A stretch of DNA of 64,000 nt from Macrostomum lignano (lineage: Eukaryota). The DNA is taken from positions 1-64,000 of the forward strand of contig NIVC01001284.1 of assembly GCA_002269645.1 (NCBI GenBank), written 5' to 3'. Below are positions 1,498 to 25,446 of the stretch, one piece after another. Position numbers and translations under genes: made by a program. Every line of letters starts with the position of its first letter. The first letter of the stretch is position 1. Below the pieces are notes generated by a model, which saw only the letters and a program-made list of their open reading frames with translations, did no database searches and was not told the origin of the DNA.

Positions 1498-2083
1498 ATG
1501 AGGGCAATCCTGCTGCTTTTTCTATTGTTTGCGTTCGGCCTTTCGGTTGTCATGGCGACGCAAAGCATGTACGCGGCTGTTAAAAAGTGGAGCCTGTCGA
1601 AAATCCGTGAGCTGTACAATTACGAGTGTATTCATTTAAATCTCTAAATCTCCAAGCAAAAGTATGACTGTCACTTCCAGAGTTGCGGCGAACAAATCGT
1701 CTATCTTTTGATGGCTGCACGCAGAGCTCAACCTTGGGTTCTTACCGTTGTGGCCGGGCAGTAGACGGAAACCGAAACCAAGACTCATACTCAGGTGCCT
1801 GCTCTCACACCAATAAAAACCCGTTCGAATGGTGGGAGGGGCAGATGGTCGCTCCATCGTTTGTCTCTTACGTCACCATCTACAACAGGCAGAACTGCTG
1901 CCCTGGCTGTCTCAACGAGTTCTCGCTGCAGCAGGTGAATGGCGTCGAGTGCAACCGAGTGAACCTGACGGTGCCGTTCTCCGTGGCCAACTTCAGCTGC
2001 GACTCGTTCGGCAGCCGAGTTCGGGTGACAAACCTGCTCAGCCAGTTCCTGACCATTTGCGAGATGAGGCTTACACGCTGTAG
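1498..2083 (+). pseudogene. F-type lectin gene copy A (signal peptide + F-type lectin domain, no PAN domain) with a 1-bp deletion near the 3' end, possibly a sequencing error
   Basis: Exon 1 1498-1606 MRAILLLFLLFAFGLSVVMATQSMYAAVKKWSLSKI; GT..AG phase-1 intron 1607-1680; exon 2 from 1681 ...CGRAVDGN...SHT...EWW...NRQNCC. Reads gagatgaggct where twin A' reads gagattgaggct, and has an extra CAG at about 1932. Confidence 0.8.
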
Positions 2084-2929
2084 CTGAGCTCGTCTCGATG
2101 TCAACTCAAAGAACTCAAAACAGTAAAGCAGCATTGTAACTAACGCGAGATCATAGAAAACACGTTTATCAAATATTTCAAGCATGCAGAGTAGAAATTA
2201 ACTGTTAAACCTGGGCAGTATTATTTCATTTAGGCAGTATGTCTGATGATATTTGAACCGTCAAAAAGTATAATAGCTTCAAGTCTCTAAGCGGCAGTTT
2301 TCGAAGTACCGGTCTGAATGTTCTTGCTGCAAAATTTCCTACTTGCAAAATGCTTAATTCAAAGGTACGAGTATTGACCGTAATGCAACAGTAGATTGTA
2401 ACTCTGTAATTTTCGACAGTTTCTGCCTGACCAGGTAGCTGCAGTCCGTGCTGTCGTGTAACTCCTTTAAATCTGTTTGCGGCTAGTGATGTCGGTAGTT
2501 TATGCACGTGTCTTTTATATTGAGTTGGTCAATGGTGAGAGCAACTCGGAGTCGATCTGAGCAACGTGCGTTTTTATTGTGTTGTCTGATGCTATAGACA
2601 GTGGTATTCAACTCTGCGCCCGTTAACTTTGATCACTTTGTCAGGATTGGCGCCTAGGAAACGGAGATTTACGCATTAGTTTCAAAATGTCAGCGGTAAT
2701 TCGATTGGCCAAACAGGGGTGTTTCTTAAAACAGCAACTACCTTTCACTGGGTAGACTTAAAGCAATATTGGCTTCGAATTTCAATAAATCTGATACAGT
2801 TTTATTCACTCTATTACTTACAGCAGATAGTTTAGCGAATTACTAAATACTCATACTCAATACAAGATATTTCATCTACTTCTGCCGCTTCCCATTGCTT
2901 TTGTTGAGTATCCGTCGTCATGGCGACAA

Positions 2930-3294
2930 AAACCCGCGCACGGCTGTCACCAATAATATTTGACAGTTAAAAATTTGCTTGTTCCTTCTAAAAGCTTTGC
3001 ACCCATTAAATGTAGTCAGCCTAAAAACATTTTTCTCGTGACCTGTCGTTTACACAGCAAGACAGCCCGCCAATCTCACACTAACTAGCTGGTGTATCTT
3101 CCTTCTTTGTAGAGCAAACTCACGGCCATGCTTCCATGCATGGGCAAAGTCAAAATGAAGCAAGCGGCTTGCCTAGTCTGGAAGAGGGATAGATCGTGCC
3201 AATAATCACAGACGTCGCTCACTACGAAAAAACCTCAACTCTTAAAATCGACGTGAAACTGAACACTGACACCTGCAGCTTCTGCTAGCTAAAG
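2930..3294 (+). promoter_or_regulatory. Conserved upstream block of MKLIL-class lectin genes (also about 8265-8650, 12290-12560, 18775-19154)
   Basis: Shared non-coding motifs CACGGCTGTCAC..AATATTTGACAGTTAAAA and GTTTACACAGCA..ACAGCC(CG)CCAATC..ACT..CTAGCT lie upstream of copies B, D, B' and of a decayed copy. Function is inferred only. Confidence 0.35.
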
Positions 3295-4114
3295 ATGAAG
3301 CTAATTCTGCTGCTGCTGCTGCTATGCTCTACATGGGAAGTTTCGTTTGCCATGAGCATCCACATCCAATTCATGGCAGTCAAACTGCGCAGCAACTCGA
3401 CTCCATTGCCATGGAGACCCTGCCTGGCAGAGATTCAATGAACTGCGCCACGCTCTGCGCTTTGAGGCCCACCTGCTTCGGCTTCAGCTGGCTGCAGGGT
3501 CTGTGCCGACTCTCTGACTGGCTGGCGTTCAGCAGCACGGATGGCTGGCAGGCCTCGGAGTCATGTGACGTGTACACCAGGATTGTCGGTAAGATGTTAT
3601 GCACTAGTATTAGGAACTTGACTAATTCACTCTGTGCAAATTTATAGTGTGCCTAAATTGAACGCGACAATTAAGCTCGTGGTAACATTATTTTGACCGC
3701 AAATAACTTCCAGACTCACAGCCACAAACTCAGCTGAAGCTCGAAAGCTGCTCGCAGAGTTCAACGCACGGGTCGAACGTTTGCGGACGAGCAATTGACG
3801 GAAACAGGAACCAAGACTACTATGGAGATTCCTGCGCCCACACCGAAAACAACCCGTTCGAATGGTGGGAGGGGCAGCTGGCCGCTCCATCGTTTGTCTC
3901 TTACGTCACCATCTACAACAGGCAGGACTGCTGCACTAATTGGCTAAAAATATTCTCGCTGCAGGTGGACGGCGTCGAGTGCAACCGAGTGAACCTGACG
4001 GTGCCGTTCTCCGTGGCCAACTTTAGCTGCAACGCCTTCGGTAGACAAGTTCGGGTGACGAACCTGCGCACCGGGTACCTTACCATTTGCGAGATCGAGG
4101 CTTACAGGCTGTAG
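3295..4114 (+). pseudogene. PAN/Apple + F-type lectin gene copy B with a 1-bp deletion in exon 1, possibly a sequencing error
   Basis: ATG 3295 (MKLILLLLLLC); exon 1 to 3588, intron 3589-3713, exon 2 3714-4114 open. Reads actccattgccatgg at about 3400-3414 where twin B' reads actccatttgccatgg, giving a frameshift. Confidence 0.8.
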
Positions 4115-4810
4115 CTGAGCTGGTGGCGAATGGCCTCAGCGACCTGCACAATGGAACTGCAAGCTGTAATTTTGAGAAACTGAACGGCTGTGATATGAAA
4201 ACAGGAGCAATCAATAAAAGTTTAAGAACCTTCTGCAGAAACTTTCAAGCATTCAAAAATGAGTATGCCTTGCAGATTGGAAGTTCAAGTATTTTTGCTT
4301 TTTAGTTTATGGGACCCCAAAAAGCATTTAGCAAGTCGAATCGGTTTTCAAATCAAACAGCACTGACATATTTTTATAAGTTTGAAGCCCTTCGTGTCGA
4401 TGTTCCGTGTGGATACTTTCAATTTGATCCATAAAGCGGGCTGCTGATGGAGAAGGGCCATCGCTCCACTATACACTGAATCGGGTTGCTTCTCTTAATC
4501 GGTAGATTTCTAGAGATGTCATCTCGAAAAGTGATTAATTAATTTTTTATTCTACCCCATGGACGCAAGACAGAAGCCAAATGGTAAAGCTAAGTCCAAA
4601 TCGAATTGTGGGAGTTGCAGCGGGTCGCTGCATCGATTGTCTCCTACTCTGCCGCTCTGCAAGAGGGGGTTGTTCGCCGAACATTTGCGCGAGCTCCCTC
4701 GATCCCTTGAGCGGTTTTCGCGTCTATAGACTAAATATAATATCTATAGGATATATGGAAGCTCGCAATGCCAATGTTGTTTTTACTTATTGCATACCAC
4801 TGAACTTGAG

Positions 4811-5367
4811 AGGGTTGTTACCTAGTGGTCAGAGCGTCGGACTCACCACTTGAAGGTCGGGGGTTCGATTCCTGATCCCGCTGGAACAATTTGTGTCCTT
4901 GAGCAAGACACTGAACTATGAGGATAGCGACGTTTGCCAGCCGACGTTTGCCAGCCGACGTTTGCCAGCCGACAGGGTTGCCAGCCGGACATTTGAAGGC
5001 GGCAATTGGTTAAAGAATTATGCCCTCTCTAGGCTTACATGTACTTGCATTTGAAAACTGGGACATAGCACCAATGTAATCCCACCTCGCTCACTACTAC
5101 TGCTACCAAATATACAGGTTACTAACAAACTACCGCTCATTAGAACCCTCTTCGTCTTCTTGATATTTTGGGTAGGTTTTAGTAACAGGTACCAAAGAAC
5201 TCTGCATTGCTTCAGTTCACCCAGCTGTCAAATGGGTGCCAGCATTAGCTGGCGTAATTGAGGGTGGATGTGGCAACCCCCAGTCCTAGGACAAATCAAC
5301 AGCCGTTCGCAGTCTTAATTCAGATGTGCCGCGCGCAATAACTGCGGCTGAGCTGTCGTTTGCACAA
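4811..5367 (+). mobile_element. tRNA-derived SINE family 1 (CORE-like body) interrupted by a nested insertion at 4921-5196
   Basis: A-box-like TAGTGGTCAGAGC and B-box GGTTCGATTCC, then TTGTGTCCTTGAGCAAGACACTGAACT // CTGCATTGCTTCAGTTCACCCAGCTGTCAAATGGG. Paralogues at 20981-21555 (+) and 63650-63935 (-). Confidence 0.75.
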
Positions 5368-5482
5368 CCTGGCGCAGACTCCATGGCAGCTGGAGTCGAT
5401 ATGCTGTGCATTTTTAGGCAGCAAACATGATTTGGGATGTCGTGCCTGCCGAGAATGCGAGTCCAGACAGAGACAGCAGTAG
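5368..5482 (-). pseudogene. Truncated inverted fragment of lectin exon 1 (signal peptide/PAN start)
   Basis: Reverse complement reads ...ctgtctctgtctggactcgcattctcggc...STPAAMESAPG and is then fused to the SINE at 5367. Upstream 5620-6120 matches the upstream region of minus-strand copy G (22950-23440). Confidence 0.8.
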
Positions 5483-6109
5483 AATTGTGGTCGAAATGTA
5501 TTGGCAAAAGTCTAATCTACGAGCCGTAAGAAACTAAAATTTTGATTTTGAGTTTTCTCTACTTAATTGTTGTCAAGCGAGCAACCCTACCCGAGCAGTA
5601 GAAGGAGTAAACATTGCCTCATATCCCAAGCCTTGCCGTGGCACCTGGGTTGATTGAGACTTGCGGCCAAACTTCGCTGCGTTTCTCCTAATAAAAATTT
5701 ATTCGTGAGTGAGCTTATTTAGATTTCTGAGAAAGTCGAATACGAAACAGAAACGAGGTGAAGGCAAACAATTTCCGGGATTTAAATGGCTAAATATCCT
5801 TTCTGCTTAATTTGTGTGAAATCGGTGTCGAGGATGCTTGTTTTGCTTGTCATGTGTACGGTCGTACGATCATATGCCTTACCGGCTTCCGTTGGCTTGA
5901 ACTTCTGAATTCACCACGCTAATTTATAGGCATTGTTTCTTCTTTTCTTGCTGATTCAACATCTTTTTACGGTGGTGGGTCTGACAAACCAGGGACTGTT
6001 TGACGAGTACTAACAAGTTAGGCCTAATAACCAGCCGTACATTGTTGTTTGCATACAATTTGAAGAAATTGCATATCTAGCAGCTTCAAAATACGCTCGC
6101 ACATGTAGT

Positions 6110-6445
6110 AGGCACGCTATGATTTTTGACAGGGGCTGTGGGCACCCTGGCTCACTTTAAGCGACATTGTCAGACAACCGGCGAGGGGATTACTGCATGT
6201 CCATTGCGCTGACTCCCCTGAGCAGGCACACAAGCGCATTGATACGCGACCTGATGATGGACAGCGACCCAGACTTTATTTCGATAGGCATGTACACTTC
6301 ACTGTGCCTTGGGGGTTGACCTTCAATCGTTAATTGCACGAGCAGCTTCAAATTTAGCCCCAAATTAATGTGACTGCACTGGAATCGAACCCAAGCCACA
6401 GGCATGTAAAAGCGTCGCGATAAAACACGGGGCTACGGACCCGTC
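6110..6445 (-). mobile_element. tRNA-derived SINE family 2
   Basis: Minus strand has a tRNA-like head (CCGTAGCCC...GGGTTCGATTCC) and a body CCGGTTGT.TGACAATGTCGCTT...CCAGGGTGC.CACAGCCCCTG shared with 23415-23750 (-) and 59425-59560 (+). Confidence 0.65.
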
Positions 6446-7178: not shown

Positions 7179-8007
7179 ATGAGGCAAGGCCCGCTCCTTC
7201 TGCTGCTGTCTCTGTCTGGACTCGCATTCTCGGCAGTCACGACATCCCAAATCATGTTTGCTGCCGTAAAACTGCACAGCATCTCGGCTCCAGCTGCCAT
7301 GGAGTCGGCGCCAGGTCTCGGCAGGTTGGAATGCGCCGAGCTCTGCTCTGTGAGGCCCGCCTGCTTCGGCTTCAGCTGGCTGCAGGGTCTGTGCCGGCTC
7401 TTTGACTGGCTGGCGTTCAGCAGCCCGGATGGCTGGCAGGTCTCGGAGTCATGCGATGTGTACACCAGGATTGTCGGTAAGACGACATACACCCTGTATT
7501 ATAATTTTATACTAATTTACTTTTACGATTTCATATTGTGCAATATTGCTTTAGCTTCAGATGGAAAGCTTGTGGAACAGGTACTTTGACCGCAAATAAC
7601 TTCCAGACCCGCAGCCGCACAATCGGCTAAAACTCGAAAGCTGCTCGCAGAGCTCAACGTATGGGTCTAGCGCTTGTGAACGAGCAATTGACGGAAACAG
7701 AAACCAAGACTACTTTGCCAATTCGTGCGCCAACACCAGAAAAAATCTGTTCGAATGGTGGGAGGGGCAGCTGGCCGCTCCATCGCTTGTCTCTTACGTC
7801 ACCATCTACAACAGGCAGGACTGCTGCCCTGAACGACTCGAAAAGTTCTCGCTGCAGGTGGACGGCGTCGAGTGCAACCGAGTGAACCTGACGGTGCCGT
7901 TCTCCGTGGCCAACTTCAGCTGCAACGCGTTCGGCAGCCGAGTTCGGGTGACAAACCTGCTCAACGAGTTCCTGGGCATCTGCGAGATCGAGGCTTACAG
8001 GCTGTAG
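7179..8007 (+). CDS. Secreted PAN/Apple + F-type lectin, copy C (intact; binding His replaced by Asn)
   Basis: Exon 1 7179-7476 (298 nt; signal peptide and CAELCSVRPACFGFSWLQGLCRL); GTAAG..TTCCAG intron 7477-7606; exon 2 7607-8007 (401 nt; AIDGN...CANT...EWW...NRQDCCPERL...ICEIEAYRL*). Phases are consistent. Confidence 0.88.
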
Positions 8008-8651: not shown

Positions 8652-9478
8652 ATGAAGCTAATTCTGCCGGTTTTGCTTTGCTCTGCGTTGGAATTTTCGT
8701 TGGCCATGAGCGTTCAACTCCAATTCAAGGTGGTCAAACTGCGCAGCAACTCGACTCCAGTTGCCATGGCGACCCTGCCTGGCAGAGATTCAATGAACTG
8801 CGCCACGCTGGGTGCTTTGAGGCCCGCCAGCTTCGGCTTCAGCTGGCTGCAGGGTCTGTGCCGACTCTTTGACTGGCTGGCATTCAGCAGCACGGATGGC
8901 TGGCAGGCGTCGGAGTCATGCGATGTGTACGCCAGGATTGTCGGTAAGAGGTCATGCACCAGTATTAGGAACTTGACTAATTCACTCGGTGTAAATTATT
9001 TATGAGCATTAATAATCATATAGTTTATTGACAAGCTCCTGGTGCAATTAGTAGTACTTTGGCCGCAAATAATTTCCAGACTCAGCCCTAAACTCAGCTA
9101 AAATTCGAAAGCTGCAAGCAGAGCTCAACGATCGTCTCGAGCGTTTGCGGACGAGCAATTGACGGAAACAGGAACCAAGATTACATGCACTTGTCCTGAA
9201 CCCATACCGAAAACAACCCGTTCGAATGGTGGGAGGGGCAGCTGGCCGCTCCATCGTTTGTCTCTTACGTCACCATCTACAACAGGCAGGACTGCTGCGC
9301 TGAACGACTCAACAAATTCTCGCTGCAGGTGGACGGCGTCGAGTGCAACCGAGTGAGCCGGACAAAGTCGTTCTCCGTGGCCAACTTTAGCTACAACGCC
9401 TTCGGCAGCCGAGTTCGATTCAGCGTACGTAGTCTGTACCTGTTTATTTGCGAGATCGAGGCTTACACGCTTAGCTGA
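8652..9478 (+). pseudogene. PAN + F-type lectin copy D (disrupted)
   Basis: Exon 1 8652-8943 has two PAN Cys lost (TLGALRPASF). Exon 2 from 9080 has a 2-bp deletion right after the acceptor and TGC>TGA at the Cys before the binding His (about 9197). Confidence 0.85.
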
Positions 9479-9946: not shown

Positions 9947-10192
9947 ATGAAGCTAATTCTGCTGGTTTTTCTTTGCTCTGCGTTGGAATTTTCGTTGGCC
10001 ATGAGCGTTCAACTCCAATTCAAGGTGGTAAAACTGCACAGCAACTCGACTCATTGTTTCATTATATTTTTATTCTACGCTTTCGACAAAAACCTGAGCT
10101 AAATTTGAAGGCCAAATCCAAATGGTATGGTGGGAGGGGCAGCTGGCCGCTCCATCGCTTGTATCTTTTGTCTCCATCTACAACAGGCATGC
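9947..10192 (+). pseudogene. Scrambled lectin gene remnant (5' part of exon 1 plus a short F-type fragment)
   Basis: 9947-10052 matches the start of copy D and then breaks off. 10125-10190 matches the tggtgggaggggcagctggccgctccatcg framework block. Confidence 0.75.
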
Positions 10193-10572
10193 CTGCATGA
10201 TTTGCATTCGAGTGCAGATGATTAAATATATTGAAATTACGACTCGTAGAAATTAAAATTGAAGCAACATAGATGACAGTTTGAGAATCCCTATTGACTC
10301 GTGCATATACCAGTATATAAACCAAAAGACACTACTTCTTAACCAGCCCACTTGAGCAAGCAGTGGCCCAGTTCGTTCATAAACAGTTTCTTATACAGAT
10401 AAACTGACACAGAAATGACTGATAAAATGCGGATTTTCCCATTGAATTCTTAAATAATTTAGAGCCTCTGGGAACGCCATTGCACAGCCTCCAGTTAAAG
10501 GTGGGCTCACCAATTATGCTAACCTCCCCCCCCCCCAATCGGCTGGCAAAGCATGTGGCGCCTCCATTCCAG

Positions 10573-11420: not shown

Positions 11421-12108
11421 ATGGGCCAAGAACGCCTACTTTTACTGCTAATTCTCTTTGCGATCGGAGTTTACGTTGTCATGGCGACGCCGATGGTGTA
11501 CTCGGCAGTTCGAATGCGCAGCATCTCGACTCCAGCTGCCATGGAGTCGGCGCCAGGACTCGGCAGGATGAAGTGCGCCGAGCTCTGCTCTGTGAGGCCC
11601 GCCTGCTTCGGCTTCAGCTGGCTGCAGGGTCTGTGCCGGCTCTTTGACTGGCTGGCATTCAGCAGCACGGATGGCTGGCAGGTCTCGGAGTCATGCGATG
11701 TGTACGCCAGGATGGTCGGTAAGACGGCATACACCAAGCACTGAGAATTTGACTAACTCTATGCGAATTCATGGTGTGCATTATTCATATTGCTCAAGTT
11801 TTTAAAGGTGGCAGTCGTGGAACAGGTATTTTGACCGCTAATAACTTCCAGACCCGAAGCCGCCAACTTGGCTAAAACTCGAAAGCTGCTCGCAGAGCTC
11901 AACGTCTTGGTTGGGTGTTTGCGGACGAGCAATTGACGGAAACAGGAACCAAGACTACTATGGAGATTCCTGCGCCCACACCAGAAAAAATCTGTTCGAA
12001 TGGTGGGAGGGGCAGCTGGCCGCTCCATCGTTTGTCTCTTACGTCACCATCTACAACCATCTACAGTCTGTACCTGTTTATTTGCGAGATCGAGGCTTAC
12101 ACGCTTAG
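11421..12108 (+). pseudogene. PAN + F-type lectin copy E (internal deletion removes the RxDxxxxR loop)
   Basis: Exon 1 11421-11718 intact; intron 11719-11851; exon 2 is open to ...VTIYN and then jumps out of frame to the 3' end of the domain at 12056-12065. Confidence 0.85.
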
Positions 12109-12623
12109 CTGAACTGGTGGTGGCGAATGGCCTCGGCAACCTCGAGTGCATCTGCTGAATGGAACTGAAAGCAGTGAATTTGAGAAACTGTACTGCTGCA
12201 ATGAAAACCGGAGCAATCAATAGGTTACTCGGGCTCCGCTTTATGAGCTTAAGTTGACAGGCAGGCCCTTTGTGCACACATTAGATGTTTGTTGCAAGTT
12301 CAAAATATTTTTCGCGTGACTTTCGTTTACACAGCAGGACAGCCCGCCAATCACACTCGCTAGCTGTGCATCCTCCTTTTTAGCAAACTCACGACCATAC
12401 TTCCACAGGCAAAATCTGGAAATCAGGCAAGCGGCTTCTTCAGTCTGGAAGAGCGAAATATCAAGCCAATAATCAGTGTCGCTTCTCGCGAGAAAACCTC
12501 AACTCTATAAAGCAACCGTTTGCTTCCGCTGATGTTGGACACTGAAACGCTGACACCAGGTTCTGCTAATCAACTAAAACAGGAGCCAAACCCAAAGGCC
12601 AAATCAAAATCGAATTTTGTAAG

Positions 12624-12902
12624 GAGCAGCTGGCTGCTCCATCGCTTGTCTCTTACGTCACCATCTATAACAGGCAGGACAACAGACCAAAGCAGACTGG
12701 CCGACACAGCGAATTCTCCCTGGACTTGAACGCCGTCGCGTGCAACCGAGTGATCCTGACGGAGTCGTTCTTCGGCGCCAATTTCAGATGCAACGCCAAT
12801 TCAGCAGCCGAGTTTCAGGTTGTTCATCTTTATGAAGAGTCTCTGGACAGTCTGCACTACAATGATTTGACGATTTTCGAGATTGAGGATTATACGCTGT
12901 AA
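12624..12902 (+). pseudogene. Degenerate F-type lectin exon-2 remnant
   Basis: Framework blocks gcagctggctgctccatcgcttgtctcttacgtcaccatc and tgcaaccgagtga, and the end gagattgaggattatacgctgtaa, are recognisable among many indels. Confidence 0.75.
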
Positions 12903-13302
12903 TCAAGGAAGTTATTGCGAGCCAGTTGCGAATATAAAAGCAGAGGAAGAATTATATTGAAATTAGAAAATAAAAGCAACATAGCTGACAGTTTGAGAAT
13001 CCCGATTGACACATTAAAATAATTGACTGTATGAGTTTCCACCAGTATTGAAATCCGAAAAACTAGAGAGGCTCCGCAGTGTAAGGGGTAGGGTCTTCGG
13101 CTTCGAGACTTTCGCTAGCAACTTTCAGGCAGTCGCTTCTTAACCTCTTTTCCCATTGAATTCTTAAACTAATTCAGAGCCTCCGGGAACGCCATCGCAC
13201 AACCTCCAGTTAAAGGTTCTGCCTTTTAACTTCAAGCAAGTACAGTTTCCAGGAAAGGTTTGCTTTGCCATGACCATAAATATACGAGCGTAAAGCTCTT
13301 TG

Positions 13303-13960: not shown

Positions 13961-14763
13961 ATGCGCCAAAAACGCCTACTTCTACTGCTAATTCTCTTTG
14001 CGATCGCAGTTTCTGTTGTCATGGCGACGCCGATGGTGTACTCGGCAGTTCGAATGCACAGCATCTCGGCTCCAGCTGCCATGGAGTCGGCGCCAGGACT
14101 CGGCAGGATGAAGTGCGCCGAGCTCTGCTCTCTGAGGCCCGCCTGCTTCGGCTTCAGCTGGCTGCAGGGTCTGTGCCGGCTCTTTGACTGGCAGGCGTTC
14201 AGCAGCACGGATGGCTGGCAGGTCTGGGAGTCATGCGATGTGTACACCGGGCCAAAAGGTAAAAACTGCTGTTCACTCTGATGATATGCTTATAGAGCTG
14301 TTACTCACACGAGACCTGATCAAGTCAACCTGCTTCCTCCATCAACATGGCTCTTATAGACTTGAAACGGCTGAAATTTGCTGACTGCCATCAGAGCTCC
14401 ACTGCCTTTATATACAGCGGATTATGCAAGCACGCTATCGACGGAAACAGGAACCAAAACTACTTTAATAATTTGTCCTGCACCCACACGGACCGCAACC
14501 CCTTCGAATGGTGAGAGGGGCAGCTGGCCGCTCCATCGTTTGTCTCTTACGTCACCATCTACAACAGGCAGGACTGCTGTGCTGAGCGACTCAACAAATT
14601 CTCGCTGCAGGTGGACGGCGTCGAGTGCAACCGAGTGAACCTGACGGTGCCGTTCTCCGTGGCCAACTTCAGCTGCAACGCCTTCGGCAGACGAGTTCGA
14701 GTTGTTAACCTTCGTAAACTTCCTGTAACGATTTGCGAGCTTGAGGCCTATACTCTCTACTAA
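13961..14763 (+). pseudogene. PAN + F-type lectin copy F (single nonsense codon)
   Basis: Exon 1 13961-14258; intron 14259-14359; exon 2 14360-14763 is in frame except TGG>TGA at 14512-14514 (EW*EGQ). It retains H...RQDCCAER. Confidence 0.85.
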
Positions 14764-15082
14764 GCAAGCTGTTATTGCAAGTCAGCAGTGATGAATATTG
14801 AAATTTCAATTATATTGAAATTAGAAGATTAAAGCAACACTGATAAAAGTTTGAAAATCTCTATTGACTTCCTAAATAGAATTGACTCTGCTTATGTTCC
14901 TGTCTTCCTGTAACGATTTGCGAGCTTGAGGCCTATACTCTCTACTAAGCAAGCTGTTATTGCAAGTCAGCAGTGATGAATATTGAAATTTCAATTATAT
15001 TGAAATTAGAAGATTAAAGCAACACTGATAAAAGTTTGAAAATCTCTATTGACTTCCTAAATAGAATTGACTCTGCTTATGT
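14720..15082 (+). repeat. About 185-bp direct tandem duplication of the end and 3' flank of copy F
   Basis: ttcctgtaacgatttgcgagc...attgactctgcttatgt occurs at about 14720-14897 and again at about 14906-15082. Confidence 0.9.
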
Positions 15083-17357: not shown

Positions 17358-17941
17358 ATGAGGGCAATCCTGCTGCTTTTTCTATTGTTTGCGTTCGGCC
17401 TTTCGGTTGTCATGGCGACGCAAAGCATGTACGCGGCTGTTAAAAAGTGGAGCCTGTCGAAAATCCGTGAGCTGTACAATTACGAGTGTATTCATTTAAA
17501 TCTCTAAATCTCCAAGCAAAAGTATGACTGTCACTTCCAGAGTTGCGGCGAACAAATCGTCTATCTTTTGATGGCTGCACGCAGAGCTCAACCTTGGGTC
17601 CTTACCGTTGTGGCCGGGCAGTAGACGGAAACCGAAACCAAGACTCATACTCAGGTGCCTGCTCTCACACCAATAAAAACCCGTTCGAATGGTGGGAGGG
17701 GCAGATGGTCGCTCCATCGTTTGTCTCTTACGTCACCATCTACAACAGGCAGAACTGCTGCCCTGGCTGTCTCAACGAGTTCTCGCTGCAGGTGAATGGC
17801 GTCGAGTGCAACCGAGTGAACCTGACGGTGCCGTTCTCCGTGGCCAACTTCAGCTGCGACTCGTTCGGCAGCCGAGTTCGGGTGACAAACCTGCTCAGCC
17901 AGTTCCTGACCATTTGCGAGATTGAGGCTTACACGCTGTAG
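17358..17941 (+). CDS. Secreted single-domain F-type lectin, copy A' (intact, no PAN domain)
   Basis: Exon 1 17358-17466 (109 nt), intron 17467-17540, exon 2 17541-17941 (401 nt). AVDGN, SHT, WWEGQ, NRQNCCPGCL, ICEIEAYTL*. Confidence 0.85.
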
Positions 17942-19154: not shown

Positions 19155-19975
19155 ATGAAGCTAATTCTGCTGCTGCTGCTGCTATGCTCTACATGGGAAG
19201 TTTCGTTTGCCATGAGCATCCACATCCAATTCATGGCAGTCAAACTGCGCAGCAACTCGACTCCATTTGCCATGGAGACCCTGCCTGGCAGAGATTCAAT
19301 GAACTGCGCCACGCTCTGCGCTTTGAGGCCCACCTGCTTCGGCTTCAGCTGGCTGCAGGGTCTGTGCCGACTCTCTGACTGGCTGGCGTTCAGCAGCACG
19401 GATGGCTGGCAGGCCTCGGAGTCATGTGACGTGTACACCAGGATTGTCGGTAAGATGTTATGCACTAGTATTAGGAACTTGACTAATTCACTCTGTGCAA
19501 ATTTATAGTGTGCCTAAATTGAACGCGACAATTAAGCTCGTGGTAACATTATTTTGACCGCAAATAACTTCCAGACTCACAGCCACAAACTCAGCTGAAG
19601 CTCGAAAGCTGCTCGCAGAGTTCAACGCACGGGTCGAACGTTTGCGGACGAGCAATTGACGGAAACAGGAACCAAGACTACTATGGAGATTCCTGCGCCC
19701 ACACCGAAAACAACCCGTTCGAATGGTGGGAGGGGCAGCTGGCCGCTCCATCGTTTGTCTCTTACGTCACCATCTACAACAGGCAGGACTGCTGCACTAA
19801 TTGGCTAAAAATATTCTCGCTGCAGGTGGACGGCGTCGAGTGCAACCGAGTGAACCTGACGGTGCCGTTCTCCGTGGCCAACTTTAGCTGCAACGCCTTC
19901 GGTAGACAAGTTCGGGTGACGAACCTGCGCACCGGGTACCTTACCATTTGCGAGATCGAGGCTTACAGGCTGTAG
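19155..19975 (+). CDS. Secreted PAN/Apple + F-type lectin, copy B' (intact; second binding Arg replaced by Trp)
   Basis: Exon 1 19155-19449 (295 nt), intron 19450-19574, exon 2 19575-19975 (401 nt). CAHT...NRQDCCTNWL...YLTICEIEAYRL*. Confidence 0.88.
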
Positions 19976-20461
19976 CTGAGCTGGTGGCGAATGGCCTCAG
20001 CGACCTGCACAATGGAACTGCAAGCTGTAATTTTGAGAAACTGAACGGCTGTGATATGAAAACAGGAGCAATCAATAAAAGTTTAAGAACCTTCTGCAGA
20101 AACTTTCAAGCATTCAAAAATGAGTATGCCTTGCAGATTGGAAGTTCAAGTATTTTTGCTTTTTAGTTTATGGGACCCCAAAAAGCATTTAGCAAGTCGA
20201 ATCGGTTTTCAAATCAAACAGCACTGACATATTTTTATAAGTTTGAAGCCCTTCGTGTCGATGTTCCGTGTGGATACTTTCAATTTGATCCATAAAGCGG
20301 GCTGCTGATGGAGAAGGGCCATCGCTCCACTACACTGAATCGGGTTGCTTCTCTTCATCGGTAGATTTCTAGAGATATCATCTCGAAATTGATTAAGTAA
20401 TTTTTTATTCTACCTTAAGGACGCAAGACAGAATCCAAATCGAATTGTGGGAGGCGCATCA

Positions 20462-20605
20462 GGCCGCTCCATCGTTTGTATCTTACTCTTACGTCACCAT
20501 CTATAACAGACTGGCCGATTCAACGAGTTCTCCTTGCGCATGAACTGCAGCGAGTGCAACCGAGTGAGCCATTATCAGTGGCTGATTATACATGCAACGC
20601 TTTCG
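20462..20605 (+). pseudogene. Short degenerate F-type lectin remnant
   Basis: ggccgctccatcgtttgt...ttacgtcaccatctataacag...gagtgcaaccgagtgagcc framework pieces with indels. Confidence 0.65.
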
Positions 20606-20980
20606 GCAATCTTGTCTTATCTTGCTTCGCCTTTTGCCATATTGAGGCGTGGCAATCTTCAGTCCACTTAAATCTGATGGCTGCAACTATTTTACCCTGT
20701 TATTGCTGTTAAGCATACAGCCGCCCAAGCTGCAACCGCCCGACCTTCACCAGAGAGCAGTTCACTTGGATGTTGTTTAAACAGTTGCACCGGGTCGTGA
20801 GTCCGGTGCCGCTTTGCAAGAGGGGGGGGGTTCCTCGTACGTTTGTGCGAGCTCCCTCCTTAAGCGGTATTTCGTGTCTATAGACTAAGTATAATAAATA
20901 TAGGATATAATAACTATAGGATATATAAAAGCTCGCATACCCAATGTTCTTTTTACGTATTCATACCACTTTAACTTGAG

Positions 20981-21555
20981 AGGGTGGTTAGAGCGTCGGA
21001 CACACCACTTGTAGGTCGTGGGTTCGATTCCTGATCCCACTAGAAGCAATTTGTGTCCTTGAGCAAGATACTGAACTCTGGGGATAGCGACGTTTGCCAG
21101 CCGACGTTTGCCAGTCGACGTTTGCCAGCCGACGTTTGCCAGCCGACGTTTGCAGGCGGCAATTGGTTAAAGAATTATGCCCTCTCTAGGCTTACATGTA
21201 CTTGCATTTGAAAACAGCAGACATAGCACCAATCTAATCCCACCTTGCTCCCTACTACTGCTACTAAATATACAGGTTACTAACAAACACTGCTCACTAG
21301 AACCCTCTTCGTCTTCTCGATATTTTTGGTAGGTTTTAGTAACAGGTACCAAAGAACTCTGCATTGCTTCAGTCCACCCAGCTGTAAAATGGGTGCCAGT
21401 CGTATTAGTTGGGGTAATTGAGGGTGGATGTGGCGACCCCCCAGTCCTCGGACTGAACAGCCGTACGCAGCCTTCAGATGCACCGCGCAATAGCTGCGGC
21501 TGAGCTGTCGGTTGCACATCTGTCCATTAGGGCAGGTGTAATAGATTATTATTAA
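20981..21555 (+). mobile_element. SINE family 1 with a nested 273-bp insertion (21081-21353) flanked by TSD GAACTCTG
   Basis: GGTGGTTAGAGC and GGTTCGATTCC boxes; TSD at 21073-21080 and 21354-21361; the insert begins with (CCGACGTTTGCCAG)n; (ATT)n-like tail near 21545. Confidence 0.8.
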
Positions 21556-21577
21556 TATCTTACTGTAACTTACCCGT

Positions 21578-21847
21578 GTACACAGCAGTATCACAGTACA
21601 CAGCAGTATCACAGTACACAGCATCCAGTATCACAGTACACAGCAGTATCACAGTACACAGCAGTATCACACAGTACACAGCATGCAGTATCACAGTACA
21701 CAGCAGTATCACAGTACACAGCAGTATCACAGTACACAGCAGTATCACAGTACACAGCAGTATCACAGTACACAGCAGTATCACAGTACACAGCAGTATC
21801 ACAGTACACAGCAGTATCACAGTACACAGCAGTATCACAGTACACAG
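21578..21847. repeat. 18-bp minisatellite (CACAGCAGTATCACAGTA)n
   Basis: Direct reading; it explains the HSSITV, STQQYH and AVYCDT repeat ORFs. Confidence 0.95.
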
Positions 21848-22250
21848 CACACACCTGCAACGGCTGCGGACAGTTGCGACTCCAATCACCAGAGTACATA
21901 TCATGCCTTACATGAGACCCAAGATTTAAAAGCGCTGAATAAAACAAATTAACCATGCAAGACTAAGAAAACAAATTAAATATTGCAATGCCACATGTTA
22001 TGTAATCAGCTCGACACTTTCAAAAGTTTCCTAAAATTTGACTTCCTGGCCGTAATAGTAGCTAGCTAAATGTTAAAATTTGAGATAGCTTAATGTTTGC
22101 AGTATTTGATGTTATTCGATTGTACGAGCGCACTTGTTCTTTGATGGCGAGCTGTAAACACCACTGCCTATGTTTCCATATTGGATTCGATTTGCATCCG
22201 CATTCCGCACTGAGCCGCTGACATACATGAGGCTCCAGCGTTCGCCTAAA

Positions 22251-22942
22251 GGCAGCTGAAGTTGGCCACGGAGAACGGCACCGTCAGGCTCACTCGGTTG
22301 CACTCGACGCCGTCCACCTGCAGCGAGAATTTGTTGAGTCACTCAGTGCAGCAGTCCTATCTGTTGTAGATGGTGACGTAAGAGACAAGCGATGGAGCGG
22401 CCAGCTGCCCCTCCCACCAATCCGACGACATCGTCGTCGGCATTGCTTCAGGACAGATGCATGAAGATTTGGTCCCTGTTTCCCTGTTTCCATCGATAGC
22501 TCGTTCGCAGAATCCGCCTCTTGTGGAGCTCTGGTTGCAGCCAGCAAGGCTGGGCTGGACGGGTCCTGTTGAGTTGCAATGGCGTCATCGAGTTACTGTC
22601 ACTTGATTTCATTTCTTAAACAACTATGCAATCAATATACTTACGTATTATAGTCATGGTGTACACGTTGCATGACTCCGAGACCTGCCAGCCACCCGTG
22701 CTGATGAATGCCAGCCAGTCAAAGAGCCGGCACAGACCCTGCAGCCAGCTGAAGCCGAAGCAGGCAGGCCTCACAGAGCAGAGCTCGGCGCATTCCAACC
22801 TGCCGAGTCCTGGCGCTGACTCCATGGCAGCTGGAGCCGAGATGCTGTGCAGCTTTACGGCAGCAAACATGATTTGGGATGTCATGACAGCCGAGAATGC
22901 GAGTCCAGACAGAGACAGCAGCAGGAGTGGACATTGCCTTAT
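22251..22942 (-). pseudogene. Inverted PAN + F-type lectin copy G (disrupted)
   Basis: Start ATG>ATA at 22942-22940 (cttgaaacATAAGG versus cttgaaacATGAGG in copy C); PAN exon intact; donor region altered. The lectin exon has CAG>TAG, CGA>TGA, a duplicated ggaaacagg and a truncated 3' end. Confidence 0.85.
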
Positions 22943-23414
22943 GTTTCAAGACTTACCTCGCACCTGGGTTGATTGAGACTTGTGGAAAATCTTCGCTGTG
23001 TTTCTCCTAGTAAAAATCTATTCGTGAGTGAAGACTAAGAAAGTCGAATACGAAATGGCAAAAGAAGTGAAGACAAACAATGTCCGGGATCCAATTGGCT
23101 ATTGTCCTAGCATAATTTGTTCGAAGTCGGTGTCAAAGAAAGCTGCTTGCTATGTTTGCCCTGTATACGGTAGCTCATATGCCAAACCGGTCTCCCTTGG
23201 CTTGAATTTCTGAATTCACCCCATTGATATATAGACATTGTTTCTACTTTCTTGTGCTTTAATTTCTTTTTAGGGTGGTGGGTCTTGACAAACCAGGAAC
23301 TGTTTGACAAGTACAAACAAGTAAGGCTTCATAACCAGCTGATATTGTTGTTTGCATACAATTTGAGAAAATTGCATATCTAGCAGCTTCTACATACGCT
23401 CGCACATGTAAATG

Positions 23415-23750
23415 GAGGCACGCTATGATTTTTGGCAGGGGCTGTGTGCACCCTGGTGCAGTTTAAGCGACATTGTCACACAACCGGCGAGAGGCATTAC
23501 TGCCCATTGCGCTGACTCCCCTAAGTAAGCACACAAGCGCACTGATACATACGCAGTCACACGCACAAGCACATGTACACTTCATTATGCCTTGAGGGTT
23601 GGCCGGCCTTAAGGGCGTTAGTTGCACGAGCAGATCGAGCCAAGCCGAGATTCGATTTTAGCCCCAAATTACTGTGACTGCAGTTGGAATTGAGCCCGGG
23701 CCGCAGGCATGTAAGAGCGTCGCGGTAGACCGCTGGGCTACGGCACTCAG
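23415..23750 (-). mobile_element. tRNA-derived SINE family 2
   Basis: Minus-strand head GTGCCGTAGCCCAGCGG...CCCGGGCTCAATTCC; body shared with 6110-6445 and 59425-59560. Confidence 0.7.
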
Positions 23751-24637
23751 TCACGCTATTGCAAACTTTCGCAGAACCGTTAGCAGCATTTTCACAAAAA
23801 TGTGCACATCCATTCTAAACTCTACTTCTTTAAACGCTATTTTACGGAAAGTTTATTTCAAATTTGGCATACGAGCGCGCGCCGCTTAAGTCACGAGCTC
23901 GAATCTGCAGCAACTAAACCAACCGTACAAATAGGGTAGCAAACAAGTGTGAGGCGAGGCACATCCTAGACAGTTGGTTGACTGCAAGTCGGTAGTGACA
24001 GTCGGACCGATTCTGGAAAAAGTTGGTCCTTGCCGAGCTCAGTGGAAGATTCGAACTCGCAACCAGAAACCGCAACCCTAACCGAAACGAAGAAGTAGGC
24101 TGCCAAAGAAAATCTTATTTTCAAACAGACCAAATGAGTTTAGACGATGTTTTTCACGGCCCCGTTGATTTTTTTCTCATCGCCTTTGCCTGTCAATCAT
24201 CCTGGGTAAAATTTGCTGTTCCGACAATATTCAAAGCAAAAAAGTTTCTAAATATGGTGTAAAAAATTAAAGATGCATTAAGCATCGCTTTTAGAATTCA
24301 AAAGCTACCCCAGGAAGACAGGGTATGCTATAATGCATCATGCATAGTAGCTCCGCCTCCCGATAGAAGATTTATCATTCATGCATGAATAAAATTTAAA
24401 ACAAAGCCAACATCCGAGGAAGCTGATTTTCTCTGACGCCATTAACACATGCAAACACTTTCGGCAGAGCGTGAAACCCTTTTGTTTGCTTTCGCATCGT
24501 TTCCATTTCCTGTTCGACTGCCCCGCTATAGTTAGGCTTCCATTAGGGCTTGGATGCAATTTTCATAAGGAGACACGCTGTGAAGTTTGGCCATGCACGA
24601 GTCTCCATCAGCCCTGCTAAACAGCAAGTCTTGAGGC

Positions 24638-25446
24638 ATGAGGCAAGGTCTAATTCTGATGCTGTCTCTGTCAGGACTCGCATTCTCGGCAGTCACGACA
24701 TCCCAAATCATGTTTGCTGCCGTAAAGCTGCACAGCATCTCGGCTCCAGCTGCCATGGAGTCGGCGCCACGACTCGGCAGGTTGGAATGCGCCGAGCTCT
24801 GCTCTGTGAGACCCGCCTGCTTCGGCTTCAGCTGGCTGCAGGGTCTGTGCCGACTCTTTGACTGGCTGGCCTTCAGCAGCACGGATGGCTGGCAGGTCTC
24901 GGAGTCATGCGATGTGTACACCAGGATTGTCGGTAATATTTCACGCACCATGTATTAAGAATTCGACTAATTCACTTCGTGGGAATTCACGGTGTGCATT
25001 AATAATATTGCTTAAGTTACAGGTACTTTGACCGCAAATAATTTTCAGACTTGCAGCCGCCAACTCGGCTAAAACTCGAAAGCTGCTCGCAGAGCTCAAC
25101 GTTTGGGTCGAACGTTTGCGGACGAGCAATTGACGGAAACAGGAACCAAGACTACTTTGCCAATTCCTGCGCCCATACCGGAATAAAGTCGTTCGAATGG
25201 TGGGAGGGGCAGCTGGCCGCTCCATCGCTTGTCTCTTACGTCACCATCTACAACAGGCAGGACTGCTGCCCTGAACGACTCGAAAAATTCTCGCTGCAGG
25301 TGAACGGCGTCGAGTGCAACCGAGTGAACCTGACGGTGCCGTTCTCCGTGGCCAACTTCAGCTGCAACGCCTTCGGCAGCCGAGTTCGAGTGGTTAATCT
25401 TCAAGACTTTCCTATAACGATTTGCGAGCTTGAGGCGTCTAGTTGA
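24638..25446 (+). CDS. Secreted PAN/Apple + F-type lectin, copy H (intact, canonical fucose-binding motif)
   Basis: Exon 1 24638-24932 (295 nt), intron 24933-25048, exon 2 25049-25446. It has exact H-x26-R-x-D-x4-R spacing (CAHT...NRQDCCPERL), the AIDGN calcium-site motif and vicinal CC. Confidence 0.9.

What the first reader, a model, noticed from the sequence alone, without database searches (positions are those of the whole stretch)
1498..25446. Repertoire-like array of secreted PAN/Apple + F-type lectins: homogenised frameworks, hypervariable binding loops
Seen: at least 10 gene copies plus fragments share one exon structure. Two long DNA blocks of exon 2 (tggtgggaggggcagctggccgctccatcg..ttgtctcttacgtcaccatctacaacaggcag and ttctcgctgcaggtg.acggcgtcgagtgcaaccgagtgaacctgacggtgccgttctccgtggccaactt) and the PAN core are almost invariant, including third codon positions. 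The intervening loops differ sharply. Loop 1: LGPYR/HGSNV/YGSSA/IVSSV/SWLGV/AFIYSGL/FGSNV. Loop 2: SYSGA/YYGDS/YFANS/YMHLS/YFNNLS. Loop 3: NKNP/ENNP/RKNL/DRNP/GIKS. Loop 4: PGC/TNW/PER/AER. Loop 5: LLSQFLT/LRTGYLT/LLNEFLG/VRSLYLF/LRKLPVT/LQDFPIT. Established: these positions correspond to the five loops (termed CDR1-5) around the fucose pocket of eel agglutinin AAA. Inference: a germline-encoded glycan-recognition repertoire (immune, microbiome or gamete/mucus recognition) maintained by framework gene conversion plus diversifying selection. I do not recall a characterised family with this PAN + F-type architecture, but I cannot check that here.
Basis: partly seen in the sequence, partly recalled or inferred. 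Interest (0 to 1): 0.85.

Follow-up and report, generated by a model that had tools for sequence, protein, structure and literature searches.

The report
Flatworm lectin gene array, shuffled loops
A 25-kb cluster in the flatworm Macrostomum lignano holds about a dozen copies (only four clearly intact) of a small secreted PAN/Apple + F-type lectin gene; gene conversion keeps the scaffold DNA nearly identical while the five sugar-site loops differ and are swapped between copies, but selection for diversity is not demonstrated.

Summary
Window 1498-25446 is a tandem array from Macrostomum lignano: 10 units with an F-type lectin (FTLD) exon plus four fragments. Only A', B', C and I are clearly intact. 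A and B each carry one 1-nt homopolymer indel. D, E, F, G, H and J are pseudogenes. A/A' lack the PAN domain. A-B and A'-B' are a 98%-identical recent duplication.

Three blocks are nearly identical in DNA among all copies, pseudogenes included: FW1 pS 0.02, FW2 pS 0.10, PAN core pS 0.13. An intronless paralogue on another contig differs from the array at pS 0.36-0.61 in the same codons. The invariance is therefore in-array homogenisation, not codon constraint.

The five variable segments align with the eel agglutinin CDR1-5 positions. They are about equally divergent at all three codon positions (pS 0.55, pN 0.46, ratio 0.84). Permutation tests and incompatible loop sharing show short-tract exchange of loops between copies.

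Gene conversion is supported. Diversifying selection is plausible (loops exceed the intron in divergence) but unproven. Three of four intact copies have lost one residue of the fucose-binding triad. I found no publication on this family. Verdict: new variant of a known kind.

The parts
1498..2087 (+). Copy A: signal-peptide exon (1498-1606) without PAN, plus FTLD exon (1681-2087). A 3-nt insertion and a 1-nt homopolymer deletion alter the C-terminus.
3295..4114 (+). Copy B: PAN exon 3295-3588 with a 1-nt deletion in a T run at 3405, intron, FTLD exon 3714-4114. Otherwise identical to B'.
4581..4700 (+). Degenerate FTLD framework fragment, counterpart of 20442-20655.
   Evidence: inspection
7179..8007 (+). 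Copy C, intact: PAN exon 7179-7476, FTLD exon 7607-8007. The His52-equivalent is Asn.
8652..9475 (+). Pseudogene D: TAA and TGA stops, 2-nt and 3-nt deletions, two PAN cysteines lost.
9947..10196 (+). Fragment E: signal peptide and N-terminus joined directly to FW1.
11421..12120 (+). Pseudogene F: intact PAN exon (11421-11718). The FTLD exon starts at 11852 and has an internal deletion after ..TIYN, which puts it out of frame. Mosaic of G-like, C-like and B-like segments.
12610..12899 (+). Fragment J: old second half of an FTLD exon. FW1 is 96% identical to C; the rest is about 82%.
13961..14762 (+). Pseudogene G: TGG>TGA in FEWWEG, longer L1 and L2, unrelated intron. Its 3' end lies inside a perfect 185-bp x2 duplication (14719-15082).
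17358..17941 (+). Copy A', intact, PAN-less: exon 1 17358-17466, 74-nt intron, FTLD exon 17541-17941. R86-equivalent is Cys and D81 is Asn.
19155..19975 (+). Copy B', intact: PAN exon 19155-19449, FTLD exon 19575-19975. In this copy FW1 is 19717-19795 and FW2 is 19813-19900. R86-equivalent is Trp. About 100% identical to UniRef A0A1I8GN.. (P0001).
20442..20655 (+). Degenerate FTLD fragment.
22238..22942 (-). Pseudogene H, inverted: ATA instead of ATG, no AG acceptor, 3 stops, truncated after FW2. Shares with D the TGA at the Cys50-equivalent codon.
24638..25446 (+). Copy I, intact: PAN exon 24638-24932, FTLD exon 25049-25446. It is the only intact copy with the full His/Arg/Arg triad. Mosaic: C-like 5' part, B-like L1, G-like 3' end.

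Best explanation
This is a lineage-specific tandem family of small secreted lectin genes in Macrostomum lignano. Most units have two exons. Exon 1 encodes a signal peptide plus a PAN/Apple-like module. Exon 2 encodes one F-type lectin domain.

The family evolves by birth-and-death: duplication, inversion, and many pseudogenes. On top of that there is frequent short-tract interlocus gene conversion, with detected tracts of roughly 60-90 nt.

Conversion keeps three blocks almost identical in DNA in all units, dead ones included. These are the PAN core, FW1 (the strand running up to the contiguous Cys-Cys) and FW2. They may be both the product of exchange and the homology that allows it; the second point is inference.

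The five short segments between them correspond to the CDR1-5 loops around the sugar pocket of eel agglutinin. They have stayed as divergent as unconstrained flanking DNA. They are moved between copies as small cassettes, so each copy carries a different combination of loop types.

Shown: domain identity, homogenisation, mosaicism, pseudogene status, and loss of triad residues in A', B' and C.

Inferred: the proteins are secreted (N-terminal hydrophobic leader, by inspection). The intact proteins are Ca2+-stabilised glycan binders with different specificities (I fucose-like; A', B', C altered or lost). Retention of loop differences inside a conversion-prone gene body reflects selection against homogenising the binding site. 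The physiological role (mucosal or innate recognition versus reproductive recognition) is not determined.
For: - Organism and family: all 11 word-index hits are M. lignano.
- FTLD. PAN.
- Homogenisation: FW1 has 0-5 nt differences in 78 nt among A', B', C, D, F, G and I (up to 9 against the dead copy H). pS is 0.021 with pN/pS about 1.2, so this is not purifying selection.
- The same codons against the singleton paralogue P0009 give pS 0.36-0.61 and pN 0.06-0.17. 25 of 77 same-amino-acid codons differ.
- Pseudogenes D, G, H and fragment J keep the blocks.
- 5' flanks are at random-level divergence for most pairs, and the intron is at p 0.18-0.24.
- Mosaicism: B'-F share 35 consecutive polymorphic sites across L2 (global permutation p<0.0005). 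B'-I share 28 across L1 (p=0.0035). F is G-like in exon 1.
- Loop-type sharing gives incompatible splits: L2 is B'=F and C=I, while L3 is B'=D and C=F.
- Loops versus intron: p 0.35-0.49 against 0.18-0.24, Fisher p<0.006 in 4 of 6 pairs.
- Functional constraint on intact copies: between the 98% duplicates, exons have 1 substitution in 1211 nt against 30 in 2460 nt outside exons. Loop lengths are conserved in intact copies.
- The Ca-site motif AIDGN/AVDGN and the structural cysteines are conserved (residue roles from PMC5712786).
Against: - Loop pN/pS is 0.84, not above 1. All three codon positions are about equally divergent (0.46/0.43/0.54). That is what unconstrained drift would also give.
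- The intron is a poor neutral yardstick, because it is itself partly homogenised.
- At least half of the units are pseudogenes.
- I could obtain no expression, polymorphism or binding data.
- The GC-biased-conversion signature is equivocal: FW2 7:0 towards GC, FW1 none, overall 9:9.
- The PAN assignment is below the Pfam threshold and the AlphaFold model of that part is poor (pLDDT 27-60).
- Everything rests on one assembly of a neopolyploid, repeat-rich genome. Polishing of multicopy regions could exaggerate identity. The 98% duplication could be an assembly duplication.
Confidence: 0.7

Rival explanations
1. Diversifying (positive) selection on the loops drives the pattern. Gene conversion sweeps the whole gene and selection actively favours new loop variants.
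For: - Variability is concentrated at the AAA CDR-equivalent positions.
- Loops are more divergent than the adjacent intron.
- The only exonic substitution between the 98% duplicates is non-synonymous and lies in L1.
- There is precedent in oyster bindin and eel fucolectins (PMC5712786).
Against: - pN/pS is 0.84 overall and 0.8-1.1 among intact copies.
- Synonymous divergence in the loops (0.55) is as high as non-synonymous divergence.
- The sample is 24 codons and 6-8 recombining sequences near saturation, so it has no power.
- Loops are exchanged rather than protected.
Confidence: 0.35
2. Relaxed constraint only. The loops are tolerant surface loops drifting neutrally in an old, decaying array. 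The frameworks look special merely because conversion needs homology and stops at heterology. There is no repertoire function.
For: - pN/pS is about 0.84 and divergence is equal at all codon positions.
- At least 6 of about 14 units are dead.
- Primary triad residues are lost in A', B' and C.
Against: - Intact copies keep reading frame and exact loop lengths. They also keep the Ca site and all structural cysteines.
- Exons are 15-fold less diverged than flanks between the recent duplicates.
- The family has many further predicted intact members elsewhere in the genome.
Confidence: 0.3
3. DNA- or RNA-level constraint on the framework blocks (a regulatory, splicing or RNA-structure element, or extreme codon selection) explains the synonymous invariance, rather than gene conversion.
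For: - The blocks are sharply bounded and GC3-rich: FW2 GC3 is 0.90-0.97.
- The FW2 protein sequence is conserved even in members that are about 40% identical overall.
Against: - The paralogue P0009 encodes nearly the same peptide with pS 0.36-0.61.
- Long-dead copies (H, D, J) retain the blocks.
- pN is about equal to pS within FW1.
Confidence: 0.05
4. Assembly or polishing artefact. Multi-mapping reads made the polisher overwrite paralogue-specific bases in similar segments, and haplotype or homeologue copies were laid in tandem.
For: - M. lignano is a neopolyploid with difficult assemblies (PMC10733133 abstract).
- Half of the differences between the 98% duplicates are indels. Two of these break the frames of A and B in homopolymers.
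- There is a perfect 185-bp x2 duplication at 14719-15082.
Against: - Proteins predicted from other assemblies show the same conserved frameworks and variable loops (P0001-P0011).
- Polishing cannot create 78-nt identity out of pS of about 0.5.
- Polishing also cannot create the loop mosaics.
Confidence: 0.07

Closest known systems
Eel fucolectins (Anguilla anguilla agglutinin AAA, PDB 1k12; A. japonica eFL-1 to -7)
   Same: - Single F-type lectin domain with the same fold (top Foldseek hit).
- Same Ca motif, same Cys50-Cys146 and Cys82-Cys83 positions, and identical H52-R79 spacing.
- A set of isoforms whose variability sits in the CDR loops, especially CDR1 and CDR2 (PMC5712786).
   Different: - The eel isoforms strictly conserve His52 and the CDR4 sequence. 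Here L4 (including R86) and even H52 vary.
- The eel proteins have no PAN/Apple module and no Cys pair bracketing CDR1.
- No DNA-level framework homogenisation or cassette exchange is mentioned in the reviews read here.
Oyster (Crassostrea gigas) sperm bindin F-lectin repeats
   Same: - FTLD diversity is concentrated around the binding pocket.
- Some isoforms lack the His-Arg-Arg triad.
- Recombination contributes to diversity (PMC5712786).
   Different: - Bindin diversity is allelic, within one or a few genes with 1-5 tandem FTLD repeats. It has demonstrated positive selection at 8 sites, recombination in a mid-domain intron, and alternative splicing.
- Here diversity lies among tandem paralogous single-FTLD genes. 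The FTLD is in one exon, exchange occurs within the exon, and positive selection is not shown.
Striped bass FBP32 (PDB 3cqo)
   Same: Best sequence match among solved structures (6e-25). It is a secreted F-type lectin with opsonin-type function.
   Different: FBP32 is a binary tandem of two FTLDs, with no PAN module and no known paralogue array of this kind.
Gene-conversion-diversified receptor families: chicken Ig pseudo-V donors, Biomphalaria FREPs, sea-urchin Sp185/333 (recalled from general knowledge, not tested here)
   Same: - Conserved frameworks flank short variable patches.
- Pseudogene copies with different patches sit next to functional genes.
- Mosaic sequences are produced by templated exchange.
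   Different: Those systems diversify somatically or within individuals. Only germline (evolutionary) exchange is shown here. The domain type is also different (lectin jellyroll rather than Ig or fibrinogen).
Apple/PAN domains of Toxoplasma gondii MIC4 (PDB 4a5v)
   Same: This is the only significant solved-structure match to the exon-1 module (2.3e-4). The spacing of the core cysteines is shared.
   Different: MIC4 is a chain of six apple domains from an apicomplexan adhesin. Here a single module is fused to an FTLD, and the similarity is weak.

Membership tests
F-type lectin domain (FTLD) fold family | F-type beta-jellyroll fold | tested here: met
   In the AlphaFold2 model of B', the FTLD part has pLDDT 70-94. 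Foldseek hits ranked 1-11 are all F-type lectin domains, led by 1k12 at E 7e-10.
F-type lectin domain (FTLD) fold family | Profile or sequence membership | tested here: met
   PF22633 and PF00754 score above their curated cut-offs in 11 of 11 members. phmmer against FBP32 gives 6e-25 and against AAA 6e-10. UniProt names the relatives 'FTP domain-containing'.
F-type lectin domain (FTLD) fold family | Cation-site motif h2DGx and structural cysteines (Cys50-Cys146, Cys108-Cys124, contiguous Cys82-Cys83) | tested here: met
   AIDGN/AVDGN, SC.HT...ICE, ECN...FSCN and DCC are present in all intact copies. Residue roles are from PMC5712786. Disulfide formation itself was not tested.
Canonical fucose-binding F-type lectin | Basic triad His52 / Arg79 / Arg86 (motif H..RxDxxxx[R/K]) in copy I | tested here: met
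   Copy I has SCAHT...NRQDCCPER, aligned without gaps to AAA H52, R79 and R86. Pseudogenes D and G also keep it.
Canonical fucose-binding F-type lectin | Same triad in copies A', B' and C | tested here: not met
   A' has R86>C and D81>N. B' has R86>W. C has H52>N. These copies are FTLD-fold members but should not be called canonical fucose binders.
Canonical fucose-binding F-type lectin | Demonstrated carbohydrate binding | not testable with these tools
   Needs recombinant protein and glycan arrays.
PAN/Apple domain | Profile match | tested here: inconclusive
   PAN_1 is hit in 8 of 11 members, best E 7e-4; the one bit score shown (B', 15.4) is below the 21.4-bit cut-off. PAN_3 is hit in 4 of 11. 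A family profile hits the MIC4 apple domain 4a5v at E 2.3e-4. UniProt labels several relatives 'Apple domain-containing'.
PAN/Apple domain | Conserved cysteine core (4-6 Cys) | tested here: met
   Five invariant Cys (C51, C55, C61, C71, C91 in B') across 11 members.
PAN/Apple domain | PAN fold | tested here: inconclusive
   The AlphaFold model of residues 20-99 has pLDDT 27-60.
Multigene family under concerted evolution by gene conversion | Paralogue identity at synonymous sites far above that of the flanks and of an out-paralogue | tested here: met
   pS is 0.02-0.13 in the three blocks. It is 0.40-0.55 elsewhere in the coding sequence and 0.36-0.61 against P0009. 5' flanks are at random level.
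Multigene family under concerted evolution by gene conversion | Statistically supported mosaic tracts | tested here: met
   A GENECONV-style permutation test gives six pairs with global p<=0.0035. Loop-type splits are incompatible.
Binding-site repertoire under diversifying selection | dN/dS > 1 at binding-site codons | tested here: not met
   Loop pN/pS is 0.84, with pS 0.545 and pN 0.455. The data are saturated and few, so this is absence of proof rather than proof of absence.
Binding-site repertoire under diversifying selection | Several isoforms expressed | not testable with these tools
   No RNA data were reachable. Gene IDs were not found in the papers or supplements searched.
Somatically diversified receptors using pseudogene donors | Somatic sequence variants within an individual | not testable with these tools
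   Only the germline arrangement is visible (pseudogenes with distinct loops next to intact genes).

The most novel reading that the evidence does not exclude
The array may work as a cassette system. Pseudogenes and fragments (D, E, F, G, H, J) would serve as donors of loop segments. The invariant framework blocks would serve as the homology for templated exchange into the few expressed genes. Exchange would be fast enough to make lectin repertoires differ between individuals, or even between somatic cells, as in chicken Ig or snail FREPs. That would be a templated binding-site diversification system built on an F-type lectin scaffold in a flatworm. The family-X (Pol mu/TdT-like) polymerase exon 13 kb away would then deserve a look, although it is most likely coincidental.
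Probability: 0.06. Interest if true: 0.9.

Novelty: new variant of a known kind. Interest (0 to 1): 0.5.

Why it matters
F-type lectins are a known way for animals without antibodies to build panels of sugar-binding specificities, as in eel serum lectins and oyster sperm bindin. This array adds three things.

- An apparently Macrostomum-restricted architecture: signal peptide, PAN/Apple module, then FTLD.
- Variation that reaches the primary fucose-contact residues, not only the outer loops.
- A very clean DNA-level picture of how such a panel is maintained. Blocks of about 80-150 nt are kept identical by gene conversion. Patches of 9-21 nt stay divergent and are exchanged as modules.

M. lignano is transparent, regenerating, inbred and transgenic. 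Expression site, function (immunity, mucus or microbiome, adhesion, or reproduction) and possible individual or somatic variation can therefore be tested directly. If the loops prove merely unconstrained, the locus is still a good natural example of very short-tract interlocus conversion.

Tried and rejected
- DNA of other family members: the look-up of encoding contigs found only P0009. P0003, P0008 and P0011 are not on record. Codon-level comparison outside the array therefore rests on one paralogue.
- Intron as a neutral yardstick: a gap-tolerant alignment gave 0.77 identity even for shuffled sequence and was discarded. Stricter scoring was used instead. The intron turned out to be partly homogenised, so it is only a conservative comparator.
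- GC-biased gene conversion: FW2 shows 7:0 GC-ward codon differences against P0009. FW1 shows none and the total is 9:9. Not used as evidence.
- P0009 as a retrocopy: it is intronless, but I saw no poly(A) remnant. Left open.
- Literature: no paper links Macrostomum to F-type lectins, fucolectins or Apple/PAN. Gene IDs Mlig024493, Mlig034341 and Mlig022285 are absent from full texts and from the supplements of PMC5816591 and PMC7336406. The leech saliva paper lists PAN and F5/8C proteins separately, not as one architecture.
- PAN+FTLD outside Macrostomum: the non-Macrostomum hits of the representative search that I looked up are multi-FTLD proteins that do not match the N-terminal ~60 profile positions, so no hit spans both domains. 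Only the best 150 of 6492 hits were visible, so absence elsewhere is not proven.
- Site-wise codon models were not run (no PAML or HyPhy). With 6-8 recombining, saturated sequences they would not be trustworthy.

Full report
**What is there.** The window is eukaryotic. [quoted passage not shown]

The 30-mer occurs 11 times and the 55-mer 8 times, with none expected by chance.

tblastn with one exon-1 and one exon-2 peptide, a MAFFT alignment of ten units and splice-site mapping give this inventory:
- A (1498-2087)
- B (3295-4114)
- a small fragment at about 4.6 kb
- C (7179-8007)
- D (8652-9475)
- E (9947-10196)
- F (11421 to about 12120)
- J (12610-12899)
- G (13961-14762)
- A' (17358-17941)
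- B' (19155-19975)
- a fragment at 20442-20655
- H (22942-22238, minus strand)
- I (24638-25446)

B, B', C, D, F, G and I have a GT..AG intron of about 100-140 nt in phase 1 between a PAN-type exon and an FTLD exon.

**Corrections to the observation.** There are three.

- A and A' have a 109-nt first exon that encodes only a leader plus about 15 residues. It splices straight to the lectin exon, so these copies have no PAN domain.
- Only A', B', C and I have clean reading frames. D has two stops, frameshifts and two missing PAN cysteines. F has an internal deletion. G has TGG>TGA inside FEWWEG. H has lost its ATG and its acceptor, carries three stops and is truncated. E, J and the small fragments are remnants. 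A and B are each broken by a 1-nt deletion in a homopolymer, which may be a long-read error.
- A-B and A'-B' belong to a 3.7-kb duplication at 98.2% identity. C and I are positional counterparts at 89%. The number of independent copies is therefore smaller than it looks.

**Domain identity.** The exon-2 product is an F-type lectin domain.
- Two Pfam models score above their cut-offs in all 11 family members.
- Striped bass FBP32 scores 6e-25 and eel agglutinin AAA 6e-10.
- The AlphaFold model has pLDDT 70-94 in this part. Its best structural matches are AAA and ten other F-type lectin structures.

The alignment to AAA is gap-free from the Ca-site motif to CDR4. This places H52, R79, D81, C82-C83 and R86 exactly. 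Residue roles are taken from the review PMC5712786.

The Ca motif (AIDGN/AVDGN) and all structural cysteines are conserved. An extra invariant Cys pair brackets loop 1.

The exon-1 module is probably PAN/Apple.
- PAN_1 hits are sub-threshold but recurrent, in 8 of 11 members.
- A family profile hits the T. gondii MIC4 apple domain at 2.3e-4.
- Five cysteines are invariant.
- UniProt gives an 'Apple domain' label to several relatives.
- The structure model of this part is poor.

**The pattern, quantified.** I ran Nei-Gojobori counts on A', B', C, D, G and I.

| Segment | pS | pN |
|---|---|---|
| FW1 (codons 48-73 of exon 2) | 0.021 | 0.025 |
| FW2 (codons 80-109 of exon 2) | 0.096 | 0.047 |
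| PAN core | 0.13 | 0.07 |
| Signal peptide | 0.43 | 0.32 |
| N-terminal strand | 0.40 | 0.25 |
| Linker | 0.48 | 0.29 |
| Five loops | 0.545 | 0.455 |

Loop divergence is about the same at codon positions 1, 2 and 3: 0.46, 0.43 and 0.54.

The loops coincide with coil segments of the model. They also coincide with the peaks of Wu-Kabat variability across 13 family proteins, 14.0 against 3.4.

The contrast is much stronger than chance. FW1 has 0-5 differences in 78 nt among A', B', C, D, F, G and I, and at most 9 against the dead copy H. The neighbouring 15-nt patches differ at 35-49% of sites.

**Why the frameworks are invariant.** Four results point to in-array gene conversion rather than constraint on the DNA.

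1. The only family member for which I could fetch DNA from another locus is the intronless singleton P0009 on NIVC01001584.1. It encodes nearly the same framework peptides. It differs from every array copy at pS 0.36 (FW1) to 0.61 (FW2), and 25 of 77 same-amino-acid codons differ.
2. Long-dead units (D, H and fragment J) still carry the blocks. In J, FW1 is 96% identical while the rest is about 82%.
3. Within FW1, pN is about equal to pS. That is what recent homogenisation gives, and not what long-term purifying selection gives.
4. Outside the transcribed region the lineages are at random-level divergence: 5' flank p is 0.35-0.40 against 0.34 for shuffled sequence. The intron is intermediate at 0.18-0.24.

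FW2 is also under strong protein-level selection family-wide. Its peptide is recognisable in members that are only about 40% identical overall.

**The loops are exchanged, not just spared.** I ran a GENECONV-style test: the longest run of concordant polymorphic sites for each pair, with 2000 site permutations. It gave these significant tracts.
- B'-F: 35 sites, alignment columns 565-647, covering loop 2 (global p<0.0005).
- B'-I: 28 sites, columns 556-621, covering loop 1 (p=0.0035).
- C-I, H-I, F-G and C-H within exon 1.

F is G-like in exon 1, C-like in the linker and loop 3, and B-like in loop 2. I is C-like at the 5' end, B-like in loop 1 and G-like at the 3' end.

Loop types are shared reticulately.
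- L1: B' resembles I.
- L2: B' equals F, C equals I, and D resembles H (including the same TGA stop).
- L3: B' equals D, and C equals F.
- L4: C equals I, and D equals G.
- L5: G resembles I.

The L2 and L3 groupings are incompatible on any tree, although the two loops are only about 12 nt apart. Each unit is thus a different combination of a limited set of loop cassettes.

**Is there diversifying selection?** It is not shown. Loop pN/pS is 0.84 overall and 0.8-1.1 among intact copies, close to saturation and based on 24 codons.

In favour of some selection:
- The loops are significantly more divergent than the intron of the same genes in 4 of 6 pairs.
- Intact copies keep frame and exact loop length.
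- Between the 98% duplicates the exons carry 1 substitution in 1211 nt, against 30 in 2460 nt outside exons. That single change is a Ser/Pro replacement in loop 1.

Against:
- The intron is itself partly homogenised.
- Half of the array is dead.

I rate maintenance of binding-site differences by selection as plausible. I rate active positive selection at about one in three.

**Functional reading.** Only copy I (plus pseudogenes D and G) keeps the full His/Arg/Arg triad. A' has R86>C and D81>N. B' has R86>W. C has H52>N. The review notes that such deviations occur in some FTLDs, for example in some oyster bindin isoforms, and imply changed or lost fucose binding.

My best account is a small set of secreted, Ca-stabilised lectins with different glycan specificities. 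The tissue and the role are unknown. I could reach no expression data.

**Comparison and novelty.** Variable-CDR isoform sets of F-type lectins are established in eels and oysters, and the FTLD motif has been noted in planarians. The new points are these.
- The PAN/Apple + FTLD architecture. Among the best 150 of 6492 HMMER hits, every hit I looked up that spans both domains is M. lignano.
- Variation that reaches the primary contact residues.
- DNA-level evidence for homogenised frameworks combined with cassette-like loop exchange in a pseudogene-rich tandem array.

I class it as a new variant of a known kind, with interest 0.5.

**Caveats.**
- There is one assembly of a neopolyploid, repeat-rich genome.
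- There is one out-paralogue for the key synonymous-site control.
- The pseudogene calls for A and B may be sequencing errors.
- Absence of literature and of the architecture elsewhere is limited to what these tools can see.

Noticed in passing
window 38441-39097 (-): A 218-aa ORF encodes a family-X DNA polymerase palm. Pfam DNA_pol_B_palm scores 4.6e-5. The best PDB match is DNA polymerase mu (2ihm, 2.8e-16), followed by TdT at about 1e-6. It lies about 13 kb from the lectin array. The proximity is most likely coincidental, but it is worth a look given the cassette-like exchange in the array.
   Followed up: partly
window 59010-59342 (-) and 62598-63080 (-): Two ORFs match the C-terminal end of amiloride-sensitive sodium channels (Pfam ASC, 3.5e-7 and 1.7e-10). 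They are probably last exons of two tandem DEG/ENaC paralogues.
   Followed up: partly
window 26287-27036, 35950-36687, 37469-37966, 39797-40525, 46807-47485, 54159-55439, 58380-58931, 61651-61962: The 27-64 kb part is dense in minisatellites with periods of 16-91 nt. One is a 21-nt unit x 61 copies at 91% identity. They have strong strand composition skew and create long spurious ORFs.
   Followed up: no
window 14719-15082: A perfect (100%) 185-bp x 2.0 tandem duplication covers loop 5, the stop codon and the 3' flank of pseudogene G. It is either very recent or an assembly artefact.
   Followed up: no
window about 9190 (D) and about 22460 (H, minus strand): Pseudogenes D and H share the same TGC>TGA stop at the Cys50-equivalent codon, within a similar loop 2 (YMHLS* / FMHLS*). 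A disabling mutation was therefore either copied between dead units or inherited by duplication.
   Followed up: partly
L001 10001-10657 (NIVC01001584.1): The dispersed paralogue P0009 (BOX15_Mlig024493g1) encodes PAN + FTLD in a single exon with no intron. It is a singleton with no other family member within +/-10 kb. It may be a retrocopy, but I saw no poly(A) remnant.
   Followed up: partly
window copies B', C and I (residues C111 and C122 of B'): An invariant cysteine pair brackets loop 1 (C-xQSST-loop-C). AAA has no counterpart. It is likely an extra disulfide pinning the CDR1-equivalent loop.
   Followed up: no
window 21578-21849: An 18-nt minisatellite (x14.6) sits between the B'-side fragment and the inverted pseudogene H, at the point where the two large duplicated units lose collinearity.
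   Followed up: no
proteins P0013, P0015, P0021, P0105, P0132, P0160: M. lignano has many other FTLD-containing predicted proteins, which UniProt names after Kringle, WSC, Sushi, fibrinogen-C or Ig-like domains. This suggests a wide FTLD expansion in the species. Some may be fused gene models.
   Followed up: no
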